NCBI GenBank assembly: GCA_965202585.1
Contig: OZ241827.1
Location: 45,632,001-45,696,000 of the forward strand
Direction: 5' to 3'
Length of the DNA: 64,000 bases
DNA from: Thalia democratica
Taxonomy: Eukaryota
The position numbers were made by a program, and so were the translations under genes. Under the pieces are notes generated by a model. It saw only the letters and a list, made by a program, of their open reading frames with translations, was not told where the DNA came from and made no database searches. Below, piece after piece: positions 13,401 through 52,200 of this stretch (positions are counted from its first letter, which is position 1; each line of letters opens with the position of its first letter).

Positions 13401-15338
13401 AAAACTTTATTTTCTTGAAAAATTTGTAAACATGTAAAACAAATCTATCTAGCACAATAAGCAAATTCAGAAATACATAGAGGGGTTGTTTGCTAACACT
13501 TTTTAGTTAAAATCTATAAATAAAACTGTTATAATTTTCACTTTATCCTGAAGCTTAACCTATTTAAAGTTGGTAATACAATATTTAAACATTTTTTATT
13601 TTGCATTAAATACACAATAACAATCATATGTCGTAACTGTAGCCCGACGAAAACGATTACAACCAAGTCAAAATAGAAAACTTCGGTACTGCGCTGCTGC
13701 TTGGCATGGGCATGACCAAAGACAAGAAGATCGGGAAATCGTTCCAAGAGCGAGTCGTACCTGTGGACGTTCGCAAGAGGCCCGCGGGACTCGGACTCGG
13801 CGCCAACGCTGCGATGAACCCCGATTCGAAAGGCAAGTTGCGGAAAGAAGACAAGTTGAACGTGGGAGACTTCGTTCAAGTGGTGTACGGGATAAACAAG
13901 GCGAGTTTCGGGGAGGTGACGGGGTACGATGCCGACCTGGGAAGACACGACGTCCTCCTACTGCCCCACCCTCGCAAGTCCGCTACCGTGAACGAATTTT
14001 CGTTGAAAAAAGTCTCCAAAGCCGACTACTCGAACGAAGAAAGAAGGATAGAGGAAGAGGGCAAGCCTAAAGTGGGCGAGAAAGCTGCCAAGAAGCGCAA
14101 AGACAACGGCCACGCTCACCCTGTTTCGTCGAAGAAAATTAAGAAGGAGCGGAAGTGGGTTGAAGCTGAACTGAGAGTGAGGATAGTCGACAAGAAGCAC
14201 GACTATTACAAGGAGAAAGCTGCTGTTGTCGATGTTCAGTACGATGGCAGTTGCACTTGCAAAACTAAAAACGGCCGCTTGATCGATCTTCACGAGTCCC
14301 AGCTGGAAACTGTCATTCCAAAGTTAGTTTGAAATAATTGTTTTTGACTTTTCAATAAATACTTCGTGATTTTATTAAGCATAACCAATTAGTTATATTG
14401 TTTATTAGTACTATTTTAATTGATCTTGATAACTTATTATAAATCGAAATTGATACGTGTTTTATAAACAAGTATGAAATAATGCCAGGTTTCATACATT
14501 AAATAATTACTTGAAAATAATTTTTTTTTGTTTTTATAAAAATAGATTTTAAGCAGTTTATGAACTTTATATGAGTTTTTATCTATAAAATAATTTAAAT
14601 ACTAAAATCGTTAAGCAGAAGCTCTATAAAAATTACTTAAATAAACAAGTCACGAGCTTTTTTGTACTAAATTTTCATTATTAAAAGTTTTTATTGTTTT
14701 CTTAGTTAAATTAATATTATAATAGAAATTAGATTAACCTTTTTTAACCAATAATAGTTTAATCAATTTAAAAAAATTTAAACTTTGCAAGTTTTATAGC
14801 ACTAATTGAATGTTTAAGTTGATCTATTTTTTACTGACAATAGTTTTTTTGATGTACATAGAGTTAGTTTCACGTTTCTAAATTCTTTATATATTTTAGT
14901 AATTTTTTATATTAAAAAAAATGTATCAAAGTTTTTCCTATAAAAAAATTATATTTTATAAAGTAAGCTATCACTGAAAATTTTATTGAAATTATTGAAC
15001 TACTTATTGAAAAAAATTATTGAACTACTATGAAAATTAAAATTAAGATGTACTGCTCAAAATGTGTACTAAATGAAGATTTTTCTTATTTTGTATATAA
15101 CTTGAAATTTTATGCTGATAAAACTTAATTTTTTAGATCATCTGACAAAGATGTGTATGTCAAAATAACCGGAGGCAGCCGATCTTCTAGAGGACGTTTA
15201 GGAAAAATTTTAAGCAAAGACAAAAGAAAAGAGAAGGTAAATGTTCAGTTATTGGAAGACAGAGATCAAGTGTTAACAATTAGTTTTGATGATGTTTGTG
15301 AATATCTTGGTAGTGTTGAAGACCATCATGACTATTAA
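4470..15338 (+). CDS. GPKOW: G-patch domain and KOW motifs-containing protein (Spp2/MOS2 family splicing factor), 5 exons, 444 aa from ATG 4470
   Basis: Exons 4470(or 4494)-4717, 10395-10503, 12474-12569, 13643-14322 and 15137-15338 join in one frame (1335 nt, all GT-AG). Family motifs seen: IKFGLKK N-terminus, IPMINRN, G-patch FGTALLLGMGM...RPAGLGLGA, KOW regions WVEAELRVRIVDK and KITGGSRSSRGRLGKILSKDK, C-terminus FDDVCEYLG. Confidence 0.92.
5187..5577. mobile_element. CAGGGTTGCCA-type MITE (hAT-like termini) with internal ACCTGG repeats
   Basis: Ends CAAGGTTGTCAC and TGGCAACCCTG, many AAACCTGG subterminal repeats, near-identical flanks TCTTAA and TCTTGA. Confidence 0.7.
5599..5931. mobile_element. 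CAGGGTT-terminal MITE with ACTCAGG repeats; related partial copies at ~6030-6190 and ~10195-10320
   Basis: Starts CAGGGTTTCCAC and ends ATCCCTG. Repeated ACTCAGG/ACTCAAG motifs are shared among the three loci. Confidence 0.6.
5949..6003. mobile_element. Terminal fragment of the same TTAA/GG family
   Basis: TTAA|GGGTATAGGTATGGTCCACC...TTGATCTTATTTTGTAGAATT is the reverse complement of 10075-10116. Confidence 0.7.
6477..6645. mobile_element. Foldback MITE with 73-bp arms
   Basis: Arms 6477-6549 and 6573-6645 are reverse complements with 4 mismatches. A second, half copy sits at 112-177. Confidence 0.85.
8040..8700 (+). mobile_element. Highly degraded CR1-like reverse transcriptase fragment in GPKOW intron 1
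   Basis: Frameshifted remnants appear in the expected RT order: FRPL/SVTSA near 8040, a KTFANKV segment resembling KAFDKV near 8125, and FADDSKMI at 8271. Confidence 0.45.
9435..10127. mobile_element. TTAA-site, GG-terminal non-autonomous DNA transposon (Kolobok-like)
   Basis: Starts TTAA|GGCCATAGGGG...GGTCCAAC and ends GTGGACCCCCCCC. Has an internal inverted segment (ATCTATCTCCTCCTTCAT / ATGAAGGAGGAGATAGAT) and shares sequence with 11433-11964 and 5949-6003. Confidence 0.7.
11433..11964. mobile_element. TTAA-flanked non-autonomous DNA transposon (Kolobok-like), same family as 9435-10127
   Basis: TTAA on both sides, GGGAA...TTCCC termini, and a shared internal segment TTTTTAGTGAAATAGTC...CCATAAGGAACCTATTG. 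Confidence 0.7.
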
Positions 15339-23880: not shown

Positions 23881-24066
23881 GTATTACTCTTTGAATCCTT
23901 TTTCAAAGCATATTGCATTTGTAAATGTAAACTAAAAATAAAATTAATTGTTTATCCACTTTGTTTAAGAAATTGTATTTTTAACTTGAAGTAGTACTGT
24001 AAGTTATGTTAGAAAGAGATGGTGTTTATAAAAGTAATAAAACTTATTTTGTTTAAATTTTTTAGC

Positions 24067-27000
24067 ATGTTACTAGAAATTATTATATTTTTGATAAATA
24101 TATTGTTTTCAAAATATGAAGAGAAGAAAGTTATCTGTTGTAGCAACTATAGACCATGCAATTTTAGAGGTAATATTTTAAGCTATTTGTTTTTTTATTA
24201 AACTACGATTGAATTTTCATAAAACTAAAATAAACAAAACTTTAAAGCTTTAAAATATATTTATAATGGGTGGGTGTCACAGTTGCACGAGGGGACACTT
24301 TTTCACAAAGTAAGCACTTAAAGAGGTACGCATCAGCGTAAAGTACGGTGCGCAGTTAACGCGGGTGCGTAGCTCTTTAAGTGTGTACTTTGTGAAAAAG
24401 TGTCCCCTCGACTTAGTTAATCTTTTTATTCTATTTATACTTATCTAAAGTAAAAACTATCTATGTTATTGAAAATAAAATTAAAATTTAGAATTAATTA
24501 TAGGTTTTGAAGATTTTGAGCAGCCAAATATATTGCGGTCTACAAATGGAGTTTTGAGAGTAGAACTGAATGTGCAAGTAGCTGAAATAGAAATAGATTG
24601 GATGAAAACAATGCGAAGAACTTACAATGGAAAACTAAACTCTGATGTTTGGCTCGTTCACCGTAATGATACTATTCTATTAAAAATTGTTAGTATAAAA
24701 ATATACTTTTGTATAAAGTTTTTAAAACTTTGCATTAACTAAATCTTTTTCTGCCTTCAGTACTAGATATTTAAAAGTTTGAAATACTGACAGTCGAGCA
24801 TTGTAACAGGTGAACCAGCTGGGACTACCTGACCCAGCAGCTCCTTTGAACTCATACAGATTTCCAAACACGACAAATATTCATACTCACGGTTTACACA
24901 TCGATTCACAGGTAGATTATCAATTTCTTATTATATTTCATCTATAAGAAAAGATTAAAAATGTTTTTAACTAATGTTTTATTCTAAAAAAATTAAAAAA
25001 ATGTGCTGTATTAGAAGTTTGAAATGAGCGTAATTTAATGCAAGTATAACACAAAAAAATAGAAACTAAAAAATTCTTTTTAAGGACCCACAAGACAACG
25101 TGTTCCGCCAGGTGCCGCCGGAGAGTATAGCTAAGTATGAGTACAAAATAAATGCTTTACAACCATCAGGAACTTACTGGTACCACCCACACTTTCATGG
25201 CGCGACTGCATTGCAAGTACTTATTTTGTAAAAATGAGCCGCATGTTACATACAATGAAGTATACTAAGAATTGGCAGCCTTTAATATGTAATGGACATA
25301 ATAGAAACTCGTAAAATCTTGATATTTCGCTCATTAAATAACTTGTTAAAAACAGTATTTCGCAGTCTGCGGAATTTAATGAGCTTACATTAAAAATATG
25401 CTCTAAAGTAATGTAAAAAATATACAATTATAAAATAAACTATATAACTTACTACTAATTTTATTAGCGATAGACCAATAAGTCTTTATAAAGGTATTAA
25501 TTAATCATCAAAAATGTTTTTCACAACTTTTAATAATAAAACATGTTTCTGACTGAATCTCGCCAAACACTGTTAGCCTTACTTATTTTTAAGTATTTAT
25601 AAACTATAAAAAGTTTAAAAAGTAGATTATTACAGTTTAAAAGCATCTTCTTTTAATTTCAACTATCAAAAAACTTTATTTTTTTCCTTAAAAGATTTGC
25701 GATTAATAAAAGTTTTTTTGTGAATTAAAAATGTATAAAGTTTAGATTTAACAGCTCTATGTAGAAAACTAGCTCACAACTTATCTACTTAAAGAGCAAC
25801 GGAGGTATGGGTGGGGCAATCGTGATATCGGACGAGAAAGAAGAAACTCCGGTCTACTTATGGGAGGTTTCATGTCCGACCAGTTGCCAACATGATATTA
25901 TTCTTATGCTGCAGCCAGTCCTAGTGTATGCGGATAAGAATGGTAGAGGCTATTCACAGATGCAGAAAAAAATTAACGACTCTTTACTTTTTAGGTATAA
26001 ACGTTTTTTGACTTAAGTACATAAAACTTGTTTTTAAACTGTTACAAAACAGTTTTTCAAGAAAAGTAAAAGAATTTCAATCAACAAAAAAATATGCGAA
26101 AGTCTACGGAGCAGAAGCCTGCACTTTCGTATACCGTGAGACAAGCTCAAGTTTAACAAAAGGGTTGCTCATACCAATTCGATCATCAGACCACAAGCTT
26201 TGGTAGACTGAAACCGGTTTCGTTCTCTCGGTCTCAGTCTACCGAACCTAATGTAATTAAAAAAAATATATTAATCTAGTTTTTTTTAACTTATTTAATA
26301 CATGTTTAAAGGGTTAAAAAACACTATAAAAATGTTTAAAGACAATCGTTTTAATTCACAGGTTAAGTCAATACATAATTTCAAAAGAAGAAACCTTTGA
26401 AGATTATGCTGAAAAGAACATTAGACACTACACGACTAATGGGAAATTATGGCCGAAGCTAATTATCACAACAAATCAAAGGAAGCGTTTTCGGTAAAAC
26501 TTTTTTTTATTTTATATTTATTTTTTATTTATTTAATCTGTAAATTATTAGGCAGTTTATTTCTAAGTATAAGAGGTGTACATAATTTTTTTAATATATA
26601 GAAACGTTGCTATAAAAACTTAAATAAGTGCAACTTTATTCGCTTAAAATGGTATTTTTATTAAATCTAAATTGAAATTAACAACTTTAAGTATTTAAAA
26701 GTTGAATATGTTTTCAATATTTCCTAAATTAAATTGAATAAAAATGTTTAATCCGTCTATCATAACAAATAATAATACATTTGTAATAAAGTTTTTTACA
26801 TTAGGTTTATAAACGGTGGTGGAGTTGACGTCTTAATATTGCAATTGTTTCGATTACGTTCCGGTCACTTGAGTCCAAGTACGAACTGCGCTTTGTACGA
26901 AATAGCAAATGATGGAATCTACTTTGACTATCCAGCAAAATTGCGTTTTAACAAAACAGTTTTGCCTCCAGGAAGTAGGGCTGACTGGTTAATTTCTTGT

Positions 27001-30000
27001 AAAAACCCAGGAGTGTATGAAGTTTGTTTAGATAGTTGGATTTTTTAATAATTGAACTTGTAATTAAATATAGTCCGACGTAGACAAAAATAAAATTTAT
27101 GCAAAGTCTCTAAAAATTTCTCAAATGATCTTATTTATTAAAAATAACGATTGATTAGTAAGTAAAAAAAAAGTGCAGTAAACAATAAGTACGTGAACCA
27201 ACAATTGTCAAAAACAATATTAATTACATTAAAATATAGTTTTTACCTATAACAAATCTAATTAATCTCAGTTTTTGTGTTAGTTTATATAAAAACGTGA
27301 AATAGTTTTATATTTTCTTGCTTAAGTACACATAAAACTTAATTTTAATTGTTTTTAATTGAAGGTTTACCAAAACTTTCTAATCTAGACATATAAGCAT
27401 ACATAAGCTATTTTGTTTTTGATTGTAACTTAACCTTAATTCCATTAGTTTTAACTAAATAAAAAACTAGTACAAAATATATTTTGAGGTTAAATAATAA
27501 AAAACTATTTTTAAGAATTTTTCTGCAGTAAGTTTATAATACTTTGTATTTAATGTAAGCAAAAGTTGCCTTAAAAAAGTTTCAGTAACTTTGAAAGTAA
27601 TAAATTTTAAACAGTATTATACCGGATAAAGTTATCTATTTTGGATCTAGCCCTAACTTAATTTAAATTAATTTTCATCTAAAGTCAATATAAAACAGCA
27701 TATTATAGTAACACTCCCTCAAAATTTACTATATTTAAATATCTACTTATTTTAAACATATTTAATACGCATGGACATCATTAAATATATATTCAAATTT
27801 TATGTCTCTTACATTAACAGCACATCTCATTTAATGACAACCAAACAAAAGTAGTGATAATTCTTCAGAAAAAAAAGTGTTATATGTAAATATTTAGCCG
27901 GATGTCCTATGTTTTTACATTTTAGTTAGTTAGCACTTTGCTCTTAAAGTTTTTATTTTTAAAAACAAATATAAGTTTTGTTTTTAATTTTTAACTGATT
28001 TTGAAACTTAAAAACTGATAAACTCCAAAAAAATCTTTACAGAGTTGCTTATACTGTTTATTAAATATCTAAACTAATGTTTTAAAATGTCTTTTTAGCT
28101 CAAAACCGATCCCTATACATCTTGTCAAACCAAATTTAAATTGTTTTCGTTACTAACTTGTAAGTTATAAAACAACGTTTTACTCTGCAGTCATTTAAAA
28201 ACCTATTTTTAGTTGTTTTAAATCAACTTTATTTCACTCCATCTTGTTATATAGATTCATGCAGTAAAACAGACTGAGCAAGAAGACTACTCGTTAGGAG
28301 GAATTTCAGCGTATCAAGGTAGGATTCTCAGGCTTCTTGTAAAACACAACTACGAAAAAACGGATCTTACCAAAATAAATGGAAGCTTACCATTACGACC
28401 GAAATTCTTACGTGATCTATCAAAAGATGAAGTTAATTCTCAATTCATTGTTGAGCTGAGTTCCAATCTGAGACTCAACCGTGAACAATTTGTAGATGCA
28501 GTTAACTATAAGTAGGATTGTTTGGAGTCCTTAAAACTTAATTTCCTTTTTAATTATAATTAATTAAACTCAAAAGTTTTTGTGATTACGTAGTAATTAC
28601 GTGAAGAAATATTCTAATAAATTTTTACTGATTTATAAAATAACTATAAAGCTTCTACTAACTAGCTTTTAAAAGCTTAAAAGTATAAACAAACTTAAAG
28701 TTTTTACTTATTTAAAACATTAAAAAATATATATTTAGACGCTAATATTAACAATAAATAACATAAAAAAGTTAGCTAAATTCGCTACTAAACTTCACAA
28801 GTTATAGATGTATATGTTTTTAATTTAATTACTCAATTAGTGTTTGTGGTTGCTTTGTTATTGTGAAAACAAACAAATAGCTAATTAAATAGGTTCGCAT
28901 GCGAAGAAGGGAGTGTCCAGGAATGGTTTCTGGTAAATTCTGCCACTGATGCTGTTCACCCCTTGCATATGCATGTCAACAGTTTTCAAGTTTATATTTT
29001 TATTCTTTTAAAAAAATTGTTATTATCTACTTTGTAATAATAAGATTAATAAACATCCTCCAATGCATTTTTGATGTTTAAAATACTTCTTTATGATAAT
29101 AACGTTTATAGATAATCGGTTACAACAAATTTAATGGACCAATCAACAGCAAGAAATCAAACGCCTTTTTTGATTTACAAAGTCAAAGAATGTGTGAAAC
29201 CCAATATACTGGATTTGAAAAAAGTCTGTTTTGTTAAACACTATTCTAATTTTTTAAAACTAAATTGTTTCAATTAACTGAAAGTTTATTTACTACCAAA
29301 TAAACTTATTTATGTATATAATTCTAAAACTAAATCAATATTTTTAAGTCAGTAATTTATTTATTTTCAAAACTAGTAGCTAAGGTTTTTCTAAAAAGAT
29401 AAAACTAAAAGCCTGATTTTCGGTTGTAACATCTTAAAATTAAACTAAATATGATTTCTGTTACAAATAAGAAATTAGTGCATATAAAATAAAATTATTT
29501 TCCAGTTAAATTTTATTAAGGCCCAGCATAAAAAGCTAATTTATCGGGACATATAGACATATTTTTTTTACTAACTACAAATAATTGCGTTTCAAATAAG
29601 ATATTAAAGTTTTAATTGTGCTTATTACTCAAGATGCCTCTTACGCGTATCCAAGCTCTGAAGACCTAAAGTATCTTGGCCATGAAACAAGGTTCAAAAG
29701 TGCTAAAGAGGACTCCATTGGATATGTATATGGCAAGCGTTTTCGAGATGTTATTGTAGTACCTCCTTTGTCAAACATTACAGTAAGACATGTCTGTATA
29801 AAACATTATACTTTGAACGAACAAATCATTGTCAAAATTATTGCGTTTGATACCTCATTAGACCACATATCTAGCTTACACCATTACGATTTCAGGTAAG
29901 ATTCGTTGCCGACAAGTACATAGGAGGTGTTGTGGTTCATTGTCATATTTCCCAGCACGAAGATGTCGGTATGCTTTTCACATACAATGTCGTATCTCCA

Positions 30001-31663
30001 GGTTGATGATACAATTTTTTTATAAAACTAAGTGAAAACATAAGTTATGTACATGTTACAAAACCTTAGATAGCTTATTTAAAGTAAATCCTTTACTTCG
30101 AGCGAATACTTTTATACTAATTTTTTATGCTAAACTTAGCTGACTTAGCTTATGCCAATAAATAATCAAAAGTGTTGAACAATTAAAGTTAATTGTTTCT
30201 TTGAAATTAAAAAACTTTTGTTCAGATCTCTATATAGATATTTATATAACATTACTGAATACGACTTAAGAAAACTACTTTCAGTTACTCAGCTATAGAG
30301 TTGTTTTGATAGAGTGTTTTTCAACTTTTCAGAATAGTATTTATTTTTATTTTGTGTTAATAACGAGCTTGTAGTAAAATTTTATAATTTATTATAATTA
30401 ATTTATTTCATAGTACAGTAGACTACCGCTTAAGTACGCACTTTTTTTGGTACGCACCTCGCCTTAAGTACGCACTTACCTAGAAAGACAAAAAAAATTC
30501 TAAATTTTCTTAGACTTAGATTTTTTCTAAAGATTTGTTCCATAGAGTCATTTTCTGACACTTTCCATCCATTTTTCTAAATTTCTCTAAACTTTTCTAA
30601 AATTTATAAATCTTTTTTATTCAAAAACTTTCAGAATATCTGCAAAAGAAAGGCTAATTTTAATGTGACATAATACAAAACTAGTTAACCACAAAAACTA
30701 GTTACAATTTTTATAAAGTCAAAATAAACATATAAAAAAAAGAAACAACAACAAAAAACTAAGTTTAAAAAAAGTTAATGAGCACCTTATCATTGTGCAC
30801 TTATACTATAAATGTTTCTACTCATATAATTTTTTTTTACAAAAACAGTCCTGAAACGTTTTTCTTTCAAATAAAATAAAATCAAGCACTTTTTAGCTAA
30901 CGGAAAATTATAATAAATGTATTAAGTAAACTAAACTTAGCTTGACTAGCATTATGTAGAAACTTTTTATAGAAAAAATAAATCATTTTAAAAAATAATC
31001 TAATAAAAAAATTTTCAGATTAGAGTTATGTATCAAATGCTATTTAAAATAAAAAGACTTAATTATTTGGCTTAATTATTTGGTGGCTAGTTGTAAGAAA
31101 GAAAACAAACAACTAAATTTCATATTATACTATGTCGTCAAAAAGTACGCACTACCCGTGCTAAGTACGCACTTTTTGGTCGGGTTCAATTTGCGTACTT
31201 AAGCGGTAGTCTACTGTAAACTATTTAAGCTGTATCTTTTTACTTTTTTATTTTTTAAAAACACTTAAGGTATTTTGGTATATTTCAAAAGCTAGCTAAG
31301 ATGATTAAGTTTTTAAATTTTTTTTTTTTTTATAATTATTCAACGAAACAAGTTCATTTAAGTAAGTACTGCAAGTATCAATTTTCAAATACCACTATCA
31401 AACTTTTTATCATTTTAAAGTACTTGTAAACTCTCTTGTTATAAAAACAAAAGTAAATATAAAGCTCTCTTGTTATAAAAACAGTTGTAATTTCGATTTG
31501 AATATACGTTGAATTTATAAGTTTTAATAAATGAAAAATGGTTTTAATAATATTTTTATTAGGTGATGAATTAGCAGCAAACATTGCGGACAAACATGGA
31601 GTTTACCCAAGTCAATGTTGGAAAAACACCACTTACCCTTTCACGACTATGAACGCTCTGTGA
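24067..31663 (+). CDS. Secreted three-domain multicopper oxidase (laccase-like), 13 exons, about 630 aa
   Basis: Exons 24067-24169, 24504-24688, 24810-24911, 25085-25216, 25795-25994, 26362-26493, 26805-27021, 28255-28511, 28893-28989, 29112-29223, 29634-29782 (alternative acceptor at 29601 is also in frame), 29896-30001 and 31563-31663 splice in frame (1893 nt). All four Cu motifs are present: TNIHTHGLH, YWYHPHFHG, HPLHMH, HCHISQHEDVGM. The hydrophobic N-terminus MLLEIIIFLINILFS looks like a signal peptide. Confidence 0.9.
24288..24410. mobile_element. 123-bp palindromic MITE with mariner-like CGAGGG termini
   Basis: The left end CGAGGGGACACTTTTTCACAAAGTA and its exact reverse complement at the right end, with further internal pairing. 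No clean TA duplication. Lies in oxidase intron 1. Confidence 0.75.
30416..31216. mobile_element. Non-autonomous Tc1/mariner (pogo/Tigger-like) element, 801 bp
   Basis: Perfect 25-bp TIR CAGTAGACTACCGCTTAAGTACGCA, TA on both flanks, subterminal AAGTACGCAC repeats and no coding capacity. Lies in the last intron of the oxidase gene. Confidence 0.9.
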
Positions 31664-33219
31664 ATGACACTTCTTACAAAAAAGAAATTACCAAAGTTCT
31701 ATTGTGATTTTAACAAAAGCGTAATTTCTTCTTAACGTTTTTTGTCTAAATTTGCTCAGATATCACAAGAAAAAAGATAAAAATAAACCATTGTGAATTT
31801 TAACAAACAACAATTTATAATAAGAGCTTATTACTAAGATTATTTTTTACAAATTAGTATATTCTTTTAGATTAAAAGCACTTTTGAAACTTTCCTTTCA
31901 ATAAAAAAAACCTATCCTTTATATTTACATTGTTATGAATAAACAAACAAAGCAATTTAAACAAATAAAGTCTTTTTGTTACCAATTTCAACTGCGCTTA
32001 CTTTAAAAATTTTAACTTTGTTTTTTTATTGATCTTAAACATCGTCTTATTATTGTCAACCACAGCCTCAGACTACGTGTCAAAACAAAGCAGTTAATGA
32101 CGCAATTTCTACAATTTTGTGTCATTACTTCGAAGCAAAAATTAGAGTTTACTCCCTACATTAAAAAGTGCACACGTGCAAATTAGTTTCATAAAATTAA
32201 AATTTTATGGTGTTATTGTTGCAATAAACTTAGAATACAATCGAGTTCTCAAATTAGTTCTTCTCAAGGTTATAAATCAAAATAAGCTTTAATTTTGCGT
32301 TTAGTAAAGTCAAAAATCAAAAGACTAAAAAAAAAAATACTTTCAACAACAACTGTATGAAAAAAATTAAAATAGCTAAATTTATTTTTCATGTAAGACT
32401 TAAATCAAAGACAAAAATATATTTTAAGTCTCACCAAAAAATTATTAAAATAACATTTTTTCCAATGAAAAACTATAAATTAACAACTGCATTCGTATAG
32501 ACTTATAAACTTTGTGATTAGAATTTCAAATAGTTTTATAAAAACTCTTTAGGAAAATTTGCACTGACATTAAGAAGCTTATTTTATAAGATTTTTAAAA
32601 TAAAACTTCAGTTTTAGTAGCTAGTTTTGTAATTTTTTTTTTAGTCTGTTCATTTTTGAGTACAACTTTTTAAAATATTTTTTCCAAAAAAAATCTTATC
32701 TTAGGAAACTATAATGAGTAGTATTGTCTTCATAATGCACTAAACTTGTTTAATAAATCAAAGATGATAAAATAGAATATTAAAAGATGATAATGCACTT
32801 AAAGATTATATATTAAAAAAACGAATAATAAAAACTAATGAAGTTAAAATATATTGTCTTTATACATTTTAGTATAAAAAATAAGCTGCTATACAGTAAG
32901 CAGAAAAAACAGTCAAATACAAACACTTTTGTACGTATCTTATAAGTTTTAAAAATATAAAGGATTACATTTTTATAAAATTGAAAGTTTTTACAGTTAT
33001 AAAAGTTAAAAACTTTAGATAACAAACTTTTATGTAAAAATTATAAAATAATAACGATTACAAAAACTTTGAAACAAATCACTTAAACATTAGTTGAATT
33101 AATTAAACATGCATAATGACTTGGTGTACAATTTAATCTTAAAGTACTTTAAATGAAAATTAACCTTTAGATTTTAATTTAACCAAAATCAGGCTGGATT
33201 TTTTTTGTATTTTCAACAC

Positions 33220-46200: not shown

Positions 46201-49200
46201 ATGTTTTCAGCTAGTGCAATTATATATTTAATTTAAATAAATTTAATGTACATCTATGGTATTAAGTTTTCCAATTAAACATTTTTAATTATTTGATTTT
46301 CGTTTCTAAATATGATTTTTGTATGGTTATATATAGTTCATAAATAACTTCTAACTACTAAATTTTATAATATATATATCATTATATACAATAAATATAC
46401 CTAAACTAAAAATTTTAAAGACATTATTATCTAAAATGTATTAAACAACTATTATGTGTGTTTTGTTACTATACAAAATATTAAAGATTAAGTTTAAGTT
46501 TAAAATAAACAAATTTAAACTTACTTAGAACTATTTAATGTTTTTATTAAATAGTAGGTGTAAAAAAAAAGGTTAAATATTTGATATTTTATCGATATAA
46601 TTTTTTATAAAATAAAAATTATCACATAAAAGATTTACTAGAAGCCTTAAATTTTATAAATCAACTACACTACATTTGGTCTCATAACATAATTAAAAGT
46701 TTTTATATTTTTATTAATTCGATGTAACTGAATGAATAAAAATTATTTTTTAAGAAATTAAGATTTATGTTTTATACATTACTTATAAGTATTTATTTCT
46801 AATTTCAGTATTGTACAGTATTGTTTTTCTTTTTTTTACTTATGTCTTGTTAAAACCCACACATTTACACAAAAGTTTAATCTAGTTCTTATTACAAAAG
46901 TTCAACTGAATTTCTTCGTAGACTACAAAAACTAATTTGCTTAACCGCAACGTAGTTAATTCAATGTTTCGAAATAAAACAAAAACATGCTAACGATAAA
47001 ACCTTGGTGTAATAACCTACACTTTCACTACCTATTAAAATAGTTTAAGTAACTATAAAAACTAACCTTGTTTAAAATATTGAGCGTTACCACTAAAAAA
47101 GCATATAATTGCTAAAAGTTATAGCTTAAAAGTTTACTTATTTTAGATATATTCTTATCTTAATAAATAAGTTCAAATTAGGCTTTTTTTTTTCTTTTTA
47201 AATAACTTTAAAAAGTTTCAAGTTGAACCATTTGTAAAATTATTTTCGTACATTTTTGTTTTGTTTATAATTTTTTTAATTTTGGGCTTGATTAACTTTC
47301 TTTAATGTTTAATCAATGTCTTATTGTAGTTTATTATTTGATTTTGTTATTTTTTTTTAACGTAAATTTTCACCTATTAACAATTATATAGTACTTAAAA
47401 AGATTAAAAAAACTTTGAAACTTAACTTGCTTTATACTTAAATTTCTGTGTAATTACGACTTTAAAACGATAAAAACTTTATGAATAAAATATATTTAAT
47501 TGTGATTAACATAACATAAATTGTATAAATAGCATTCAGTTTTAAAAATAAAGAGTAACATGCTCAGGCGTGTTTTCTTACTTTAAATAAGAAAAATTAG
47601 ATAAAATTGTAAAAGTTACAATCAATGTCCTTTCATTAAAAAAATGTTGGTTACCTATTTCGAGGTATTAAGGTTTTACAGTTTTATTATATATCTATTT
47701 TTACAAGTTTACTGTAATGAGATAAAATATATCAACAGACACAAAAAAAGCAACTAAAAATACACCTTAGTAATTAATCAAAATAACTATATAAGTTAGT
47801 TAAGATACTAAATATTTTAACTTTATATTCTAACAGTAGGTTGTTTAACTTTTCTGAAGATAAACATGTTAAGGCCTTAGTAGATATAATTACAAAAAAG
47901 AAGTATTAGCTATTTAAATGATTTTTTACTAAAAGTGCGTAACAAAACTGAAACATAGTAGCAACTGCTTCTTTTTAGACTAGGGGTCGCAAACTGCGGC
48001 TTACAAAGCAAAAATCTACGGTCTACGGTGCACTTTTAGATATAGACGTACTTTAAAAAAAATATTTATAAAAAATATGGTGAAAGTCACAACTAAGCTC
48101 TAAATTGGAGGTTTTCTTTTTTTTTTATTATGTCTTGTTTTATTACTTTTTTGCTTTAGAATAGTATTGTTTATTTATTACTAAACTTGTTTAAAATAAC
48201 TATGGCCCGCTGAAGACCTTTTTCTATAAAATGTGGCTCACGAGCTACTTCTATTACAAAAATGTTTTCGTTACTTGTAAAAGACTGCTTAAACCTGATC
48301 TAAACTAACCTATTATCTTAGAACCTAATTAGCATACTGAGTAAGAACTACCTTTATATACAAAGTAGTCTGCTGCTATCCTAAAACATGTGAAGATTAT
48401 AGCCTGTGCTACCTATACTAATTTAGTACTAGTTTTCCACTTTAATTTATTATTATTATTATCAAGTTTATTGTCCAACAAAGGACCTAGGCATTAAAAC
48501 CTAGGCCACTTAAACTGAAAGACACTAAAAAGAAAAAAACAAATTACAGTGATTAAATAAACATAAACATAAAACTTATACAAAGTACAAACTGAATAAA
48601 TTAAAACTTTCACAATTCAACGATTCCAAAGTCACCAATCTCCAATTATACGTTCCAAAGCAACAAATACCTGTGACAAGCATTTCTGTCAAATCTTCAG
48701 AACCTGTCTTCATCACGCAGAACACTGATCTGAGCTACTATTTGCCACTCGTTATGACGGCAAATTCAGTCAAAAATCACTTCAAAAAAGTGGAAGCAAC
48801 AGTTCACAAATCTAGCTTAGGAATCAACTGAGTATCCAACAATTTCAAAATCTAAAGCCCAAAGCACATTAACAACAGCCCTTCCGAAAAAATCAAAGTT
48901 GAAAAGTACCTAAAATCTATAAGGGGAAGGTGTAGCTTACAGATTAAACTACCAATAAACTACATACCACACACCAAATCAATGGCTAAAGAGATGAACA
49001 AAATTAATCACTTATAAATTTTACTAGTAAATATTTTATTTAAATCAAATCTTTTTAAGTTTAATCGAAAATCTTTAAGATTTTTGCACGATACTAGTTC
49101 ATTTGGAAGTTTGTTCCACATTTTTACCGAACGATAGAAAAAAGATTCGTGCCAACCAACATAGTTGAAATGATATTTGCATGTATATTTTCTATTATTA

Positions 49201-52200
49201 CCTCTGAGTGAGTAATTATTTTCATAAGGTTTAAAGAAAGTTTGAGAATCAATAGTAGTTTCATTGTTAATCAGTTTAAAAAAAGTAATTAGATCAAATT
49301 CAAGTCTTCTGTATTCTAAAGTTTTTATATTAAGCTGTGTTAGTCTGTCTATGTAAGACGTATATGAAATATTGCACCGATTAAAGATTAATCTCGTAAA
49401 TTTTCTTTGAATAGATTCTAGTTGGTTGATGTCTTTTATAGAATCTGGAGACCATAAAGGTGTGTTGTATTCCATCTTAGGACGGATGTAAACTAGGTAC
49501 AATTTTTTAAGAATTACCAAATCCGTAGATATAAAGCTTTTAAGAACTTGAAAAGATAAAATTGATGCAGTACGGTAAATATAGTTAATATGATGGTTCC
49601 ATTTTAAATTATCTGAAATAAAAATTCCAAGGTCTTTGAATACCTCAGTTTTAGGTAAGATTGCATTGTTTATTTTAAAATCAAACGTTGGAATAGGTGT
49701 ACTTTTGTGAATATTCAAAACATGACATTTGCTGGGATTTAGGTTTAATCTCCTTTCTTTTAACCAATGGTAGATTTTATCTAAAGATTTTTGTAAAACT
49801 AAGTTAGATTGGCTAAATATTTTTGTGTCGTCTGCAAAAAGCTTAATGTTGCTATTAGAATCAACCTCTAAGGTTATATCATTTATATAGATTATAAATA
49901 ACAGTGGACCTATAACCCCTCCTTGCGGAACTCCACTAAAAATTGGTAAGGATTCTGAGAACGTGTTACCGATAACTACTCTTTGTGTTCTTTCCTGAAG
50001 AAATTCTTTGAACCATTCAACTAGATTTCTATTAATTTTGTATTGAGATAAAGTTTTAATTAACTTAAAATGAGAGACAGAGTCAAACGCTTTCTGAATG
50101 TCTGTATAAATTACATTGATAGATTTATTGGTAAAAAAAGATACTAACCATGAATGAAGGCAATCCAATAATTGAATACATGAAGTTCGTTTAGGAAGAA
50201 AACCAAATTGTTTCGGAGAAATAAGATTATTTAAGAAAAGATGATTAAGTATTTTTAAGGAAATTATATGTTCAAAAGATCTGCAAAAGCTACTAGTTAG
50301 TGAAATTGGTCTATAGTTTAATGGATTATTTTTGTTTCCTTTTTTGAATATTGGTATAATATAAGATATTTTCCATTGCCTTGGTATGAAAGATGTCGCT
50401 AAAGAGCAATTAAAAATTAAATTAAATTAAAAGAGCAAAAAAAAAAAATTTGAAATAGCCTAAGCTGCTTTTTTGTTATTTTAAACTCATTACTTTTTAC
50501 AACTAGTAATAAAATAAAGTAAAGATGTGTATAACTTTATTCACAGATAAAGAATTGGTATAATAATATCATGCCAATTATTGAGAAAAAATTTTCGAAA
50601 CCAGCAGAAAATTCTGACTCACTTCGGAGCCAGATAAAAGAGTTTGATATCTCTTATTTACAAGTTACAGTAAGTTATTTTTCAATATTTGATAACCTAA
50701 AAAAAAATTCTATACCATACTTTACTTTATTAAAATAAAAGCTTTAGTCTGCTTTACTAAGAATGAATCATTTTTAATCAAAAAAAAAAAAACAGAATAA
50801 TAAACTGCATTAAATTCCAATTTTTTGTTGTTTGTATAATAATTTTAAACAATTTGCAAAAAAAATTAAAAGTCAATAAAGCTACTTTTTTTTCATAATT
50901 GTAATGAAATATTGATTTTTTGTTTTTAAGACGTCTTTATTGTCTTTATTTTTTAATTTATATTGAAATTAGTTTTATTAATGCTGACTACTTATAGAAA
51001 GTATCAATTAGTTAGATTTGCATAAAAATCACTAACTCAACATTGAAAATCACTAACTATTTAATTTGAATTAAAAAATCAGAACAAAAAAAATCATTAC
51101 AAGATTTTATCTTAAATATCGTTTATAAAACACTAAAAAAAATAAGTTTTTACAAAAAAAATATTGTTTGGTTTTATGTTACTATTGATAAAAGATTTTT
51201 ATTTTCGAAACAACAATATGATATGTTTTTCTATAACACTTTATAGTTTCGGTCTATATTCTTACTTTTTTTATTGTTAAGTTTTAAAACTTAATTTACA
51301 GCTTTGTTTAGTTCATGGTTTCCAAAAATCATTTTAATAAACACCCCCTTGGCACAAATCTATAAAATAAACGCTCTCGTTCCTTAAATGTTGCCTTTTC
51401 ACTAGCTAATTTCCAATTTACTTGTTCACCACCTCAATACTTTTTCTCTGATAGCCTAAAAGTACCCCTAAAGGAACGATAGTGCCTGCTTTGGGAAACT
51501 AAGCTTAATTGAGCTGCGATATTTGCCTTATTAGTTTTGCAATCTTAACAGTTTTTGTTTAACTCTTAATCAAAACAACTACACAACTACTTGATATTTT
51601 TACACATACTACTTATTTACACTTTTATAAACATACGTGTTTAATGTGTTTAATTTGACGTGGAGTTTCTTAAAGTTTGCTATAACATAAATTTAAAAAA
51701 ATAAAACATCCTTAACAAGACCTACATTAATAGCTTTTTTTCAGGTATTAAATATACTAAAGCACAGTAGAAATTATTATTACTTAATTGCAGTTATTTT
51801 AGGTCTTAAACAATTGTTTAGCTGTAAGTATCGCAGGTTAATTTCTTTCCGCAAGTTGGAACTAACAAGCAGATAAAATCCGTTTAATAGCCGTACAACT
51901 CTTATAAACTTCTATCTACTCTAGAAAAGCTTTTAACCTTTATATTTATCATGATAAAAAACTTTAACTTTTTAATTCTATTTTATTAAATTTATATATA
52001 TAGTGTGAGAGTACAAGTACATAAGCCTTTTGTCTACTGATTTACTATGAGTTACTAACAAAATCAAACAAGGAGAATACAATGCCGTAGGTCAAAAAAA
52101 AACAAGGTATTTAGTTTAATAACAATACAAAAAAACTTAATATGTAATACTACTAAAACTTAAAAGTAAAGATGAGGATGAAAGCTCTTTAAAGTAAAAC

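What the first reader, a model, noticed from the sequence alone, without database searches (positions are those of the whole stretch)
24067..31663. Bacterial-type multicopper oxidase in an animal genome, domesticated with 12 introns
Seen: motifs PNTTNIHTHGLH, GTYWYHPHFHGATALQ..GGMGGAIVI, an N-terminal PNILRSTNGVLRVELNV segment, and HCHISQHEDVGM with a Met axial ligand. Known, from my recall of the families: this motif style resembles bacterial CueO/McoA/McoC-like oxidases and their relatives in microbial eukaryotes, rather than insect laccases (TIHWHG, HFWHSH) or six-domain ceruloplasmin/hephaestin. Inference: an old horizontal acquisition, now secreted, with an intact four-copper site and a possible role in metal oxidation, cuticle/tunic hardening or defence.
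Basis: partly seen in the sequence, partly recalled or inferred. Interest (0 to 1): 0.7.

Follow-up and report, generated by a model that had tools for sequence, protein, structure and literature searches.

The report
Chordate copper oxidase of microbial type
This is a real, intact, 13-exon gene for a secreted four-copper oxidase of the bacterial and algal type; it belongs to an old gene family that sea squirts, salp-like tunicates and amphioxus share, so it is not a recent bacterial import, and that family's odd distribution among animals is the interesting part.

Summary
Window 24067-31663 (+) carries a 13-exon, 12-intron gene. All introns are GT-AG. It encodes a 633-aa three-domain multicopper oxidase with all 12 copper ligands.

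It is not a recent or lineage-specific bacterial import.
- **Family:** it belongs to a multigene family in ascidians (Ciona, Clavelina, Styela), pelagic tunicates and amphioxus.
- **Introns:** it shares all 12 intron positions with Clavelina and 5 exact position-and-phase matches with Branchiostoma. The gene therefore already had introns in the last common chordate ancestor.
- **Trees:** chordates are monophyletic (100/100) and sister (100/99) to a large clade of marine protist oxidases. That clade includes diatoms, haptophytes, dinoflagellates, diplonemids, euglenids and prasinophytes. Both sit inside bacterial oxidases.
- **Other animals:** no other animal phylum appeared in three database searches.
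- **Closest structures:** Thermus laccase, McoC and CueO. It fails the CueO family test.
- **Constraint:** an orthologous exon from a related species gives dN/dS 0.14, with diverged introns.

The bacterial-type label, the intact copper site and the intron count are right. An old horizontal acquisition, before the chordate ancestor and more likely from a protist-like donor, is plausible but unproven. Ancient eukaryotic descent with many losses is the live rival. I found no paper on this family. The scan had noted this stretch only once, as this same finding.

The parts
24067..24169 (+). Exon 1 (residues 1-35): start codon, hydrophobic signal-like N-terminus, conserved C..PC motif
   Evidence: Aligns with the signal peptide and CS..PC.F.GG start of ascidian and amphioxus proteins. 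Donor GTAATA, phase 1, shared with Clavelina, Ciona and Branchiostoma. An in-frame ATG at 24019 is an alternative start.
24504..24688 (+). Exon 2 (residues 35-96), first cupredoxin domain
   Evidence: tblastn with P0010, P0012 and P0016. The phase-0 intron after it is shared with amphioxus.
24810..24911 (+). Exon 3 (residues 97-130) with HTHGLH; His121 (24882-24884) and His123 (24888-24890)
   Evidence: 53-62% identical to ascidian proteins. The ligands align to CueO H101 and H103.
25085..25216 (+). Exon 4 (residues 131-174) with WYHPH; His164 and His166 (25184-25192)
   Evidence: Pfam Cu-oxidase_3 E=3e-6. Best PDB match is Thermus laccase. The ligands align to CueO H141 and H143.
25795..25994 (+). 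Exon 5 (residues 175-241), end of domain 1 with the SCP..C cysteine pair
   Evidence: Aligned to P0012 residues 169-242. The phase-2 donor is shared with Clavelina and Branchiostoma.
26362..26493 (+). Exon 6 (residues 241-285), start of domain 2 (TTNGKLWP ... KRFR)
   Evidence: Found only through homologs.
26805..27021 (+). Exon 7 (residues 285-357), domain 2, with Cys313 and Cys350
   Evidence: Four diverged paralogous copies of this exon exist in the same genome. The two cysteines are kept in 22 of 22 chordate rows and in protists. The phase-0 intron after it is shared with amphioxus.
28255..28511 (+). Exon 8 (residues 358-443), the domain 2-3 linker region
   Evidence: An orthologous exon lies on Tara metagenome contig L033. 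The exon is 81% identical with no gaps and both splice sites are kept, while the introns are 61-62% identical with gaps; dN/dS is 0.14.
28893..28989 (+). Exon 9 (residues 443-475) with HPLHMH; His465, His468 and His470 (28957-28974)
   Evidence: Pfam Cu-oxidase_2 E=7e-6. Paralogs end this exon at the same ..HVN.FQ.
29112..29232 (+). Exon 10 (residues 476-516), the chordate-only insert (IIGYNKFNGP ... C503 ...)
   Evidence: Aligns to VISYN.YTGP ... C..Q of ascidian and amphioxus proteins. The segment is absent from CueO, bacterial and protist relatives (109 residues against 46-50 between the two motifs). An alternative donor lies at 29223.
29634..29782 (+). Exon 11 (residues 516-565), end of the insert and a domain 3 strand (LKYLGHE ... 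VVPPLSNIT)
   Evidence: 47-51% identical to P0010, P0012 and P0016 and conserved in paralogs.
29896..30001 (+). Exon 12 (residues 566-601) with HCHISQHEDVGM; His580, Cys581, His582, His586, Glu587 and Met591 (29938-29973)
   Evidence: Pfam Cu-oxidase_2 E=9e-6. The residues align to CueO H499, C500, H501, H505, E506 and M510.
31563..31663 (+). Exon 13 (residues 601-633 plus the TGA stop), a C-terminal tail with conserved YP.QC (Cys619) and no hydrophobic anchor
   Evidence: Aligns to the ..AYPG.C.. tail of ascidian proteins. AATAAA lies at 31782.

Best explanation
The locus is a functional nuclear gene of a pelagic tunicate. It encodes a secreted, soluble, three-cupredoxin-domain multicopper oxidase of 633 aa.

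Mechanism, inferred from family chemistry. A type-1 copper is held by His465, Cys581 and His586 with Met591 as axial ligand. It takes single electrons from a substrate and passes them through the His-Cys-His triad to a trinuclear copper cluster held by eight histidines. There O2 is reduced to water, with Glu587 as the proton relay.

The substrate is unknown. I lean to a metal ion such as Fe(II) or Cu(I) (about 45%), then phenolic or matrix cross-linking substrates (about 35%), then something else (about 20%).

Evolution. The gene is one of at least five copies in this genome. It belongs to a family restricted, among animals seen here, to tunicates and amphioxus. That family has been inherited vertically with its introns since the chordate ancestor. 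It is marked by a roughly 58-aa insert in domain 3 and four probable disulfides. Its nearest relatives are oxidases of marine protists, then bacteria. I put the family's origin at about 55% ancient horizontal transfer into the chordate or deuterostome stem from a microbial donor, and about 40% old eukaryotic gene lost from other animals.
For: Gene model: 13 exons, all introns GT-AG, exon GC 38.8% against intron GC 23.5%, and an end-to-end alignment with Ciona P0012. All 12 ligand positions and the CueO E506 equivalent are present.

Constraint: exon 8 against a related species gives dN/dS 0.14 with diverged introns and kept splice sites. Two marine metatranscriptome runs hold 11% and 5% of the locus's words, below the 25% that exons make up.

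Vertical descent: 12 of 12 intron positions are shared with Clavelina, 9 exactly with Ciona plus 2 that sit two columns off in the same phase, and 5 exact position-and-phase matches with Branchiostoma.

Careful ML tree: chordates 100/100, tunicates 100/96, amphioxus 100/93, chordates plus protist clade 100/99. The larger tree shows the same.

Distribution: searches with Clavelina, Branchiostoma and Eutreptiella queries returned no other animals.

Fold and type: Thermus laccase is the top match by sequence (128 bits). It is also the top match by structure for the modelled Ciona ortholog (pLDDT 90, TM 0.81-0.84 by target).

Secretion: hydrophobic N-terminus, eight conserved cysteines outside the copper site and seven N-glycosylation sequons.
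Against: No full-length transcript-derived protein of this copy turned up in the searches. The window protein sits on a long branch (1.0 changes per column) and has a biased composition. The fold model is of the Ciona ortholog, not of the window protein. The substrate cannot be read from sequence; the Met-rich segment that CueO and Thermus laccase use for Cu(I) is absent (10 Met in 633 residues). Absence from other animals rests on word-seeded searches that list only 120 hits each. Chordates are sister to the protist clade, not nested in it, so no donor is identified.
Confidence: 0.85

Rival explanations
1. The family is an ancient eukaryotic gene, itself of bacterial ancestry. It was inherited vertically into animals and lost independently in vertebrates, ambulacrarians, protostomes, cnidarians, sponges, fungi and choanoflagellates. 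No transfer into animals occurred.
For: Chordates are sister to the eukaryote-rich protist clade, not nested within it (97/96 for the protist clade). Amphioxus is as similar to a euglenid protein (38% identity, 286 bits) as protists are to each other. The Cys313-Cys350 pair is shared by chordates and protists but not by CueO. Five introns predate the chordate ancestor.
Against: It needs many independent losses across opisthokonts. No other opisthokont appeared in three searches. Relationships inside the protist clade do not follow species phylogeny: diatom, cryptophyte and dinoflagellate rows are interleaved, and two bacteria are nested among them. Transfer is therefore common in this family. 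The protist genes I inspected have no introns.
Confidence: 0.4
2. A recent, lineage-specific transfer brought a bacterial oxidase into this tunicate, where it was domesticated with introns afterwards.
For: The copper motifs and the best PDB and ESM Atlas matches are bacterial.
Against: Orthologs and paralogs exist in ascidians and amphioxus with shared intron positions. The tree mirrors the chordate phylogeny. Bacterial proteins are only 25-30% identical, against 39-40% for ascidian ones.
Confidence: 0.02
3. The locus is a decaying pseudogene or an assembly contaminant rather than a working host gene.
For: The terminal branch is long. One paralog in the genome, on C4 at 53.42 Mb, is clearly a pseudogene. 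There is no read-level RNA evidence.
Against: The 633-codon frame is open across 13 exons, all splice sites are canonical and all ligands are kept. dN/dS is 0.14. The gene lies mid-scaffold among host genes, and its AT-rich introns carry a host dispersed repeat.
Confidence: 0.03
4. It is an ordinary member of the classical animal laccase or ferroxidase lineage (insect MCO/laccase2-like or hephaestin-like).
For: It shares the Pfam domains of all multicopper oxidases.
Against: The genome's classical copies carry TIHWHG...WMDGVPMVTQCP and score 68-85 bits on Cu-oxidase_3. This gene has NIHTHGLH and scores 27.7 bits. No insect, plant or ceruloplasmin-type structure is among the 60 best PDB sequence matches listed or the 50 best fold matches listed, which are almost all bacterial plus the fungal bilirubin oxidase.
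Confidence: 0.01

Closest known systems
Chordate 'multicopper oxidase mco-like / CueO-like' proteins annotated in Ciona intestinalis, Clavelina lepadiformis, Styela clava and Branchiostoma species
   Same: Same clade (100/100), with 31-40% identity over the full length. Same intron positions, same domain-3 insert, same conserved cysteines, and a signal peptide.
   Different: The window protein lacks the C-terminal hydrophobic tail seen in several ascidian copies. It sits on a long branch. Its sister is another copy 5 Mb away on the same chromosome, so it is one half of a duplication found so far only in this genome and in marine metatranscriptomes.
Thermus thermophilus HB27 laccase (Tth-MCO, PDB 2xu9)
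   Same: Best solved match by sequence and by fold. It shares the three cupredoxin domains, the WYHPH.HG motif style, and Met as axial ligand.
   Different: Only about 24% identity. Tth-MCO has a Met-rich beta-hairpin over the type-1 site and is a bacterial periplasmic metallo-oxidase. The chordate protein has no Met-rich segment but has an extra 58-aa insert, disulfides and glycosylation sequons.
Escherichia coli CueO (cuprous oxidase)
   Same: All 12 copper ligands and the Glu506 proton relay align, and the HCH...HED.GM motif is shared. CueO is the best NCBIfam model.
   Different: The score is 89-112 bits against a cut-off of 525, so the chordate protein is not an equivalog. It has no Met-rich helix and no Tat signal. 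The CueO Asp112 column holds Pro in the alignment.
Multicopper oxidases of marine protists (Seminavis, Prymnesium, Symbiodinium, Polarella, Eutreptiella, Diplonema, Cymbomonas)
   Same: Sister clade (100/99), with 36-40% identity to amphioxus. They share the Cys313-Cys350 pair.
   Different: They lack the chordate domain-3 insert and the N-terminal cysteine pairs. The genes I inspected have no introns.
Plant LPR1-type 'bacterial-type ferroxidase' (PMC9168544, title and abstract only)
   Same: A precedent for a bacterial-type multicopper oxidase working in a multicellular eukaryote.
   Different: I did not test any relationship. From my own knowledge LPR1 is CotA-like, which is a different bacterial subgroup.

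Membership tests
Three-domain multicopper oxidases (laccase-like, Pfam Cu-oxidase_3 / Cu-oxidase / Cu-oxidase_2) | Four copper-binding motifs HxHG, HxH, HxxHxH and HCHxxxHxxxxM, giving 10 His, 1 Cys and 1 Met | tested here: met
   His121, 123, 164, 166, 465, 468, 470, 580, 582 and 586, Cys581 and Met591 align to the CueO ligands.
Three-domain multicopper oxidases (laccase-like, Pfam Cu-oxidase_3 / Cu-oxidase / Cu-oxidase_2) | N- and C-terminal cupredoxin domains recognised by the Pfam models above their cut-offs | tested here: met
   Single exons score 27.7 bits (cut-off 21) on PF07732 and 26.3 and 25.9 bits (cut-off 20.4) on PF07731.
Three-domain multicopper oxidases (laccase-like, Pfam Cu-oxidase_3 / Cu-oxidase / Cu-oxidase_2) | A middle cupredoxin domain, making three domains in all | tested here: inconclusive
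   PF00394 does not hit the window exons, although it hits the amphioxus homologs. The modelled Ciona ortholog (39.5% identical over the full length) superposes on three-domain bacterial oxidases at TM 0.8 by target. The window protein could not be folded because the spliced product has no reference.
CueO (NCBIfam NF008205 equivalog, cuprous oxidase) | Score at or above the curated cut-off of 525 bits | tested here: not met
   Ciona, Clavelina and Branchiostoma relatives score 89-112 bits; E. coli CueO scores 983 bits.
CueO (NCBIfam NF008205 equivalog, cuprous oxidase) | Met-rich segment covering the type-1 site | tested here: not met
   Only 10 Met in 633 residues, and none clustered in the translated model.
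Chordate mco-like clade (tunicates plus amphioxus) | Falls inside the clade in a maximum-likelihood tree | tested here: met
   Chordates 100/100. The window groups with the Ciona P0012-14 and Clavelina P0010-11 subfamily at 100/96.
Chordate mco-like clade (tunicates plus amphioxus) | Shared intron positions and phases | tested here: met
   12 of 12 with Clavelina and 5 exact with Branchiostoma; I estimate well under one coincidence by chance.
Chordate mco-like clade (tunicates plus amphioxus) | An insert of about 58 aa between the HxxHxH and HCH motifs, and the conserved cysteine set | tested here: met
   109 residues against 46-50 in CueO, bacteria and protists. Cys25, 31, 201, 205, 313, 350, 503 and 619 are kept in 19-22 of 22 chordate rows.
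Classical animal laccase / MCO1-laccase2 type | TIHWHG ... DGVP..TQCPI motif block in domain 1 | tested here: not met
   The window has NIHTHGLHIDSQDPQDN. At least seven other loci in the same genome carry the classical block.
Horizontally acquired gene | The recipient clade is nested within a donor clade | tested here: inconclusive
   Chordates are sister to the protist-rich clade, not nested in it, and both lie inside bacterial oxidases when rooted on CueO.
Horizontally acquired gene | Restricted distribution in the recipient kingdom | tested here: met
   Only tunicates and amphioxus among the named animal hits in three searches. The searches are word-seeded and list 120 hits each, so this is not exhaustive.
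Horizontally acquired gene | Integrated in the host genome, not a contaminant | tested here: met
   12 spliceosomal introns, a position in the middle of a 108 Mb scaffold, host genes and a host repeat nearby.

The most novel reading that the evidence does not exclude
A single ancient transfer put a marine-protist or bacterial Thermus/CueO-type oxidase into the stem of chordates or deuterostomes. There it gained introns, a 58-aa domain-3 insert and disulfides. It expanded in filter-feeding invertebrate chordates and was lost in vertebrates. One expressed pelagic-tunicate subfamily has replaced a type-1 copper histidine with aspartate, which points to new chemistry.
Probability: 0.5. Interest if true: 0.6.

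Novelty: new member of a known kind. Interest (0 to 1): 0.45.

Why it matters
Well-supported foreign genes that have persisted in chordates are rare; tunicate cellulose synthase is the classic case (my own knowledge). A copper oxidase family shared only by tunicates and amphioxus among animals would be a second candidate of comparable age. Its nearest relatives are in marine plankton, and its introns were fixed before the chordate ancestor. It also gives a concrete, testable enzyme for extracellular metal or phenol oxidation in tunicates. For this particular locus the result is sobering. It is one ordinary, conserved member of a family that is already annotated, though apparently not described in papers, and it is not a fresh bacterial import.

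Tried and rejected
- **Read laying.** Pfam had seen 28885-28995 earlier. Two local scripts used a draft translation whose last exon 9 codon includes base 28989. From then on, that stretch was masked with N in local BLAST and the codon was written X in the stored model.
- **First draft model.** The splice-site-only model (565 aa) was wrong in two places. It had a false exon at 26067-26202 and lacked exon 10. Alignment to homologs corrected it.
- **Exon-only database search.** Exon 8 against 1.84 billion representatives gave only 9 hits, though one of them led to the family.
- **Literature.** Six searches found no paper on a tunicate or amphioxus oxidase of this type. The ascidian 'Tuphoxin' paper concerns a tyrosinase. 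The algae-to-animals transfer paper and the Styela genome paper do not mention this gene.
- **ESM Atlas.** It returned only bacterial clusters.
- **Contigs and naming.** P0045, the nearest non-chordate NCBI protein, lies on an 8 kb contig with no name, so I could not place it.
- **Folding.** The window protein could not be folded because a spliced product has no reference. I folded the Ciona ortholog instead.
- **Complex prediction.** Not attempted; no binding claim is made.


Full report
**Setting.** The window is G000:C2:45632001-45696000, from an 802 Mb assembly on a 108 Mb scaffold at about 25% GC. Earlier notes on the same window call the organism a pelagic tunicate. My results fit that. 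A GPKOW exon lies at 13706-14329, and the nearest relatives of the gene are ascidian proteins.

**Observation.** Single exons hit Pfam Cu-oxidase_3 and Cu-oxidase_2 above their curated cut-offs. The WYHPH exon matches Thermus thermophilus laccase best, and CueO further down the list, among solved structures.

**Gene model.** My first model used splice sites only. Alignment to full-length relatives showed it was wrong in two places. Those relatives came from an exon 8 search of 1.84 billion representatives, which returned Clavelina P0006, and a follow-up search with P0006.

The corrected model:
- It has 13 exons: 24067-24169, 24504-24688, 24810-24911, 25085-25216, 25795-25994, 26362-26493, 26805-27021, 28255-28511, 28893-28989, 29112-29232, 29634-29782, 29896-30001 and 31563-31663.
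- All 12 introns are GT-AG.
- Exon GC is 38.8% and intron GC is 23.5%.
- The product is 633 aa and aligns over residues 1-632 with Ciona P0012 at 39.5% identity.

The exon 10 donor (29232 or 29223, both phase 1) and the start codon (24067, or the in-frame 24019) stay open. A T-rich tract ending in AG at 24064-24065, one base before the ATG, could be a spliced-leader acceptor. That is inference only.

**Is the gene working?** Several lines say yes.
- All 12 copper ligand positions of CueO are occupied by the same residues, and the Glu506 proton relay is present as Glu587.
- A 538-base Tara Oceans metagenome contig from a related species carries the orthologous exon 8. The exon is 81% identical with no gaps, and both splice sites sit where I predicted. 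The flanking introns are 61-62% identical with many gaps, and dN/dS is 0.14.
- Two marine metatranscriptome runs hold 11% and 5% of the locus's sampled words, below the 25% of the locus that is exon.

I could not verify the last point at read level. I kept that stretch out of all later searches.

**Family in this genome.** Exon 7 finds four diverged paralogous loci, and their exon structure matches.
- The copy at C2:50.79 Mb is 92-100% identical to a JGI metatranscriptome protein, P0025. It is the window gene's sister in the tree (95/94).
- The copy at C2:51.14 Mb is 80-97% identical to P0028.
- The copy on C5 belongs to the same subfamily as the C2:51.14 Mb copy.
- The copy on C4 has stop codons and lost ligands, so it is a pseudogene.

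Separately, the genome has at least 14 strong Cu-oxidase_3 loci of the classical animal kind, with the motif TIHWHG...WMDGVPMVTQCPI. The two oxidase types therefore coexist.

**Distribution.** A search with Clavelina P0006 returned three tiers.
- Ciona, Clavelina and Branchiostoma proteins scored 230-630 bits.
- About twenty unnamed proteins from roughly 2 kb marine metatranscriptome contigs scored 315-441 bits.
- Scores then dropped to about 190 bits for Cymbomonas, Eutreptiella and bacteria.

A search with Branchiostoma P0021 gave the same animals plus Styela, then a gap from 360 to 220 bits. No echinoderm, hemichordate, vertebrate, protostome, cnidarian or sponge protein appeared in either search.

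A third search, with Eutreptiella P0047, showed that the sister group is large. It spans diatoms, haptophytes, dinoflagellates, a cryptophyte and prasinophytes, plus one bacterium, Endozoicomonas. Diplonemids, a pelagophyte and further dinoflagellates were named by later look-ups. Branchiostoma P0031 scored 286 bits at 38% identity, which is as close as the protists are to each other.

Genomic context shows that two unnamed members lie on eukaryotic contigs, next to eIF2D, a nucleoporin and CAF1A. One lies on a bacterial contig.

**Phylogeny.** I ran a careful IQ-TREE search (66 rows, 535 columns, LG+C20 PMSF) rooted on E. coli CueO.

| Grouping | Support (UFBoot/SH-aLRT) |
|---|---|
| Chordates | 100/100 |
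| Tunicates | 100/96 |
| Amphioxus | 100/93 |
| Protist-rich clade | 97/96 |
| Chordates plus protist-rich clade | 100/99 |
| Window's subfamily with Ciona P0012-14 and Clavelina P0010-11 | 100/96 |

The chordate-plus-protist group sits on a 0.41 stem inside bacterial oxidases. Quick trees of 107 and 80 rows agree. All the metatranscriptome proteins fall inside tunicates. The window protein has a long terminal branch (1.0) and a biased composition, but its placement is stable across the three trees.

**Introns.** I mapped exact exon structures of Branchiostoma P0021, Ciona P0013 and Clavelina P0010 on their genomic loci and projected them on an alignment.
- The window gene shares all 12 introns with Clavelina. 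Eleven match exactly and one is shifted by three columns in a variable stretch.
- It shares nine exactly with Ciona, plus two that sit two columns off in the same phase.
- It shares five exactly, in position and phase, with amphioxus.

With 12 introns each over about 1900 possible sites, chance predicts about 0.1 coincidence (my arithmetic). The gene was therefore already split by introns in the last common chordate ancestor.

**What kind of oxidase is it?**
- By sequence, the Ciona ortholog matches Thermus laccase (128 bits), then CueO (71), McoC, bilirubin oxidase and CotA. No insect, plant or ceruloplasmin-type entry is among the 60 best listed.
- The best NCBIfam model is CueO, but at 89-112 bits against a cut-off of 525. 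It is not a CueO equivalog.
- ESM Atlas neighbours of the amphioxus protein are all bacterial clusters.
- An AlphaFold model of the Ciona ortholog (pLDDT 90.3, pTM 0.87) superposes best on Thermus laccase, with TM 0.81-0.84 by target. Next come McoC, Sulfurimonas and Pediococcus oxidases, phenoxazinone synthase, bilirubin oxidase, CotA and CueO.

Compared with all of these, chordate proteins carry about 58 extra residues between the HxxHxH and HCH motifs: 109 against 46-50. In the window these are encoded by exon 10 and the start of exon 11. The stretch is modelled with high confidence in the ortholog.

Eight cysteines outside the copper site are conserved. The Cys313-Cys350 pair is shared with protists, and the others are found only in chordates. 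There is no Met-rich segment. There are seven N-glycosylation sequons and a hydrophobic N-terminus. Unlike several ascidian copies, the window protein has no C-terminal hydrophobic tail.

**Mechanism.** The intact ligand set, the fold of the ortholog and evolutionary constraint are shown. From established multicopper oxidase chemistry I infer the following. The type-1 copper takes one electron at a time from a substrate. The Cys-His pathway carries it to the trinuclear cluster, where O2 is reduced to water. The Met axial ligand suggests a low to middle redox potential.

Secretion is inferred from the N-terminus, the cysteines and the sequons. The substrate is not determined. The nearest characterised enzymes are metallo-oxidases, which tilts me to Fe(II) or Cu(I) at about 45%. 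The missing Met-rich element and the tunicate setting keep phenolic or matrix substrates at about 35%.

**Origin.** Three readings can be set aside.
- Contamination is excluded by the introns, the scaffold position and the host repeat in intron 1.
- A recent bacterial transfer is excluded by the shared introns and the clade structure.
- Membership of the classical animal laccases is contradicted by motifs and rankings.

Two readings remain. One is an ancient transfer into the chordate or deuterostome stem from a marine microbe, followed by loss in vertebrates. The other is an old eukaryotic gene lost from all other sampled opisthokonts.

Three things favour transfer. The restriction to two chordate subphyla is striking. 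The protist clade shows much non-vertical history, including nested bacteria. The protist genes I inspected have no introns. Against it, chordates are sister to that clade rather than nested in it, so no donor can be named. I put the odds at about 55 to 40.

**Novelty.** The family is annotated in NCBI and UniProt under automatic names such as 'mco-like', 'CueO-like' and 'ferroxidase'. I found no paper that describes it or its distribution in six literature searches. The window gene is a new member of a known kind. The family-level pattern deserves a proper phylogenomic study.

Noticed in passing
window 24288-24410 (intron 1): A 123-nt foldback with 60-nt arms, 87% complementary, and a 3-nt loop; it is richer in GC than its surroundings. 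It is a dispersed repeat with at least 50 matches across the chromosomes, so it is probably a MITE-like element.
   Followed up: partly
G000:C2:51136940-51144142 and G000:C5:33782463-33792052 (loci L016+L020, L017+L021): Two paralogs carry HCHLTGDEDQGM, in which the second type-1 copper histidine is replaced by aspartate. The same change marks a clade of abundant marine metatranscriptome proteins (P0016, P0017, P0028). This is therefore an expressed pelagic-tunicate subfamily with an altered type-1 site.
   Followed up: partly
G000:C4:53417428-53421133 (L018+L022): This paralog has several in-frame stop codons and has lost copper ligands (YYPHTNES, and LPIHMHAN in place of HPIHMH). It is a pseudogene of the P0028-like subfamily.
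   Followed up: partly
G000:C2:50791649-50796809 (L019+L023): The window gene's sister paralog lies 5.1 Mb away on the same chromosome. It is 92-100% identical, exon by exon, to protein P0025 from JGI metatranscriptome 3300019144. This species or a very close relative was therefore sampled there and expresses that copy.
   Followed up: partly
G000 C6:15.10-15.17 Mb, C6:62.90-62.92 Mb, C8:35.13-35.18 Mb, C154 and others (L001-L010): There are at least 14 loci of classical TIHWHG-type laccase-like oxidases, several of them in tandem clusters. This family is distinct from the one studied here. Another note of the scan (s1-311495) mentions a laccase with a shortened type-1 loop elsewhere in this genome.
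   Followed up: no
proteins P0114 (L031) and P0361 (Endozoicomonas arenosclerae): Two bacterial oxidases form a long-branched pair (100) nested inside the protist-rich clade. P0114 has a clearly bacterial gene neighbourhood. This suggests transfer between marine eukaryotes and bacteria in this family. From my own knowledge, Endozoicomonas species are symbionts of marine invertebrates.
   Followed up: no
window 49008-50165 (-): A 385-aa open frame with a reverse-transcriptase domain (RVT_1, E=3.6e-26), a retroelement fragment about 17 kb downstream of the gene.
   Followed up: no
window 24050-24069: A run of T ending in AG at 24064-24065 sits one base before the ATG at 24067. It has the look of a spliced-leader trans-splice acceptor, which from my own knowledge is common in tunicates. 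An in-frame ATG at 24019 would add 16 hydrophobic residues if that site is not used.
   Followed up: no
window 31658-31668: A GT at 31660-31661 (GTGAAT) overlaps the TGA stop codon. A splice from there could skip the stop and add a tail such as the hydrophobic C-terminus seen in ascidian copies. I did not look for a downstream exon.
   Followed up: no
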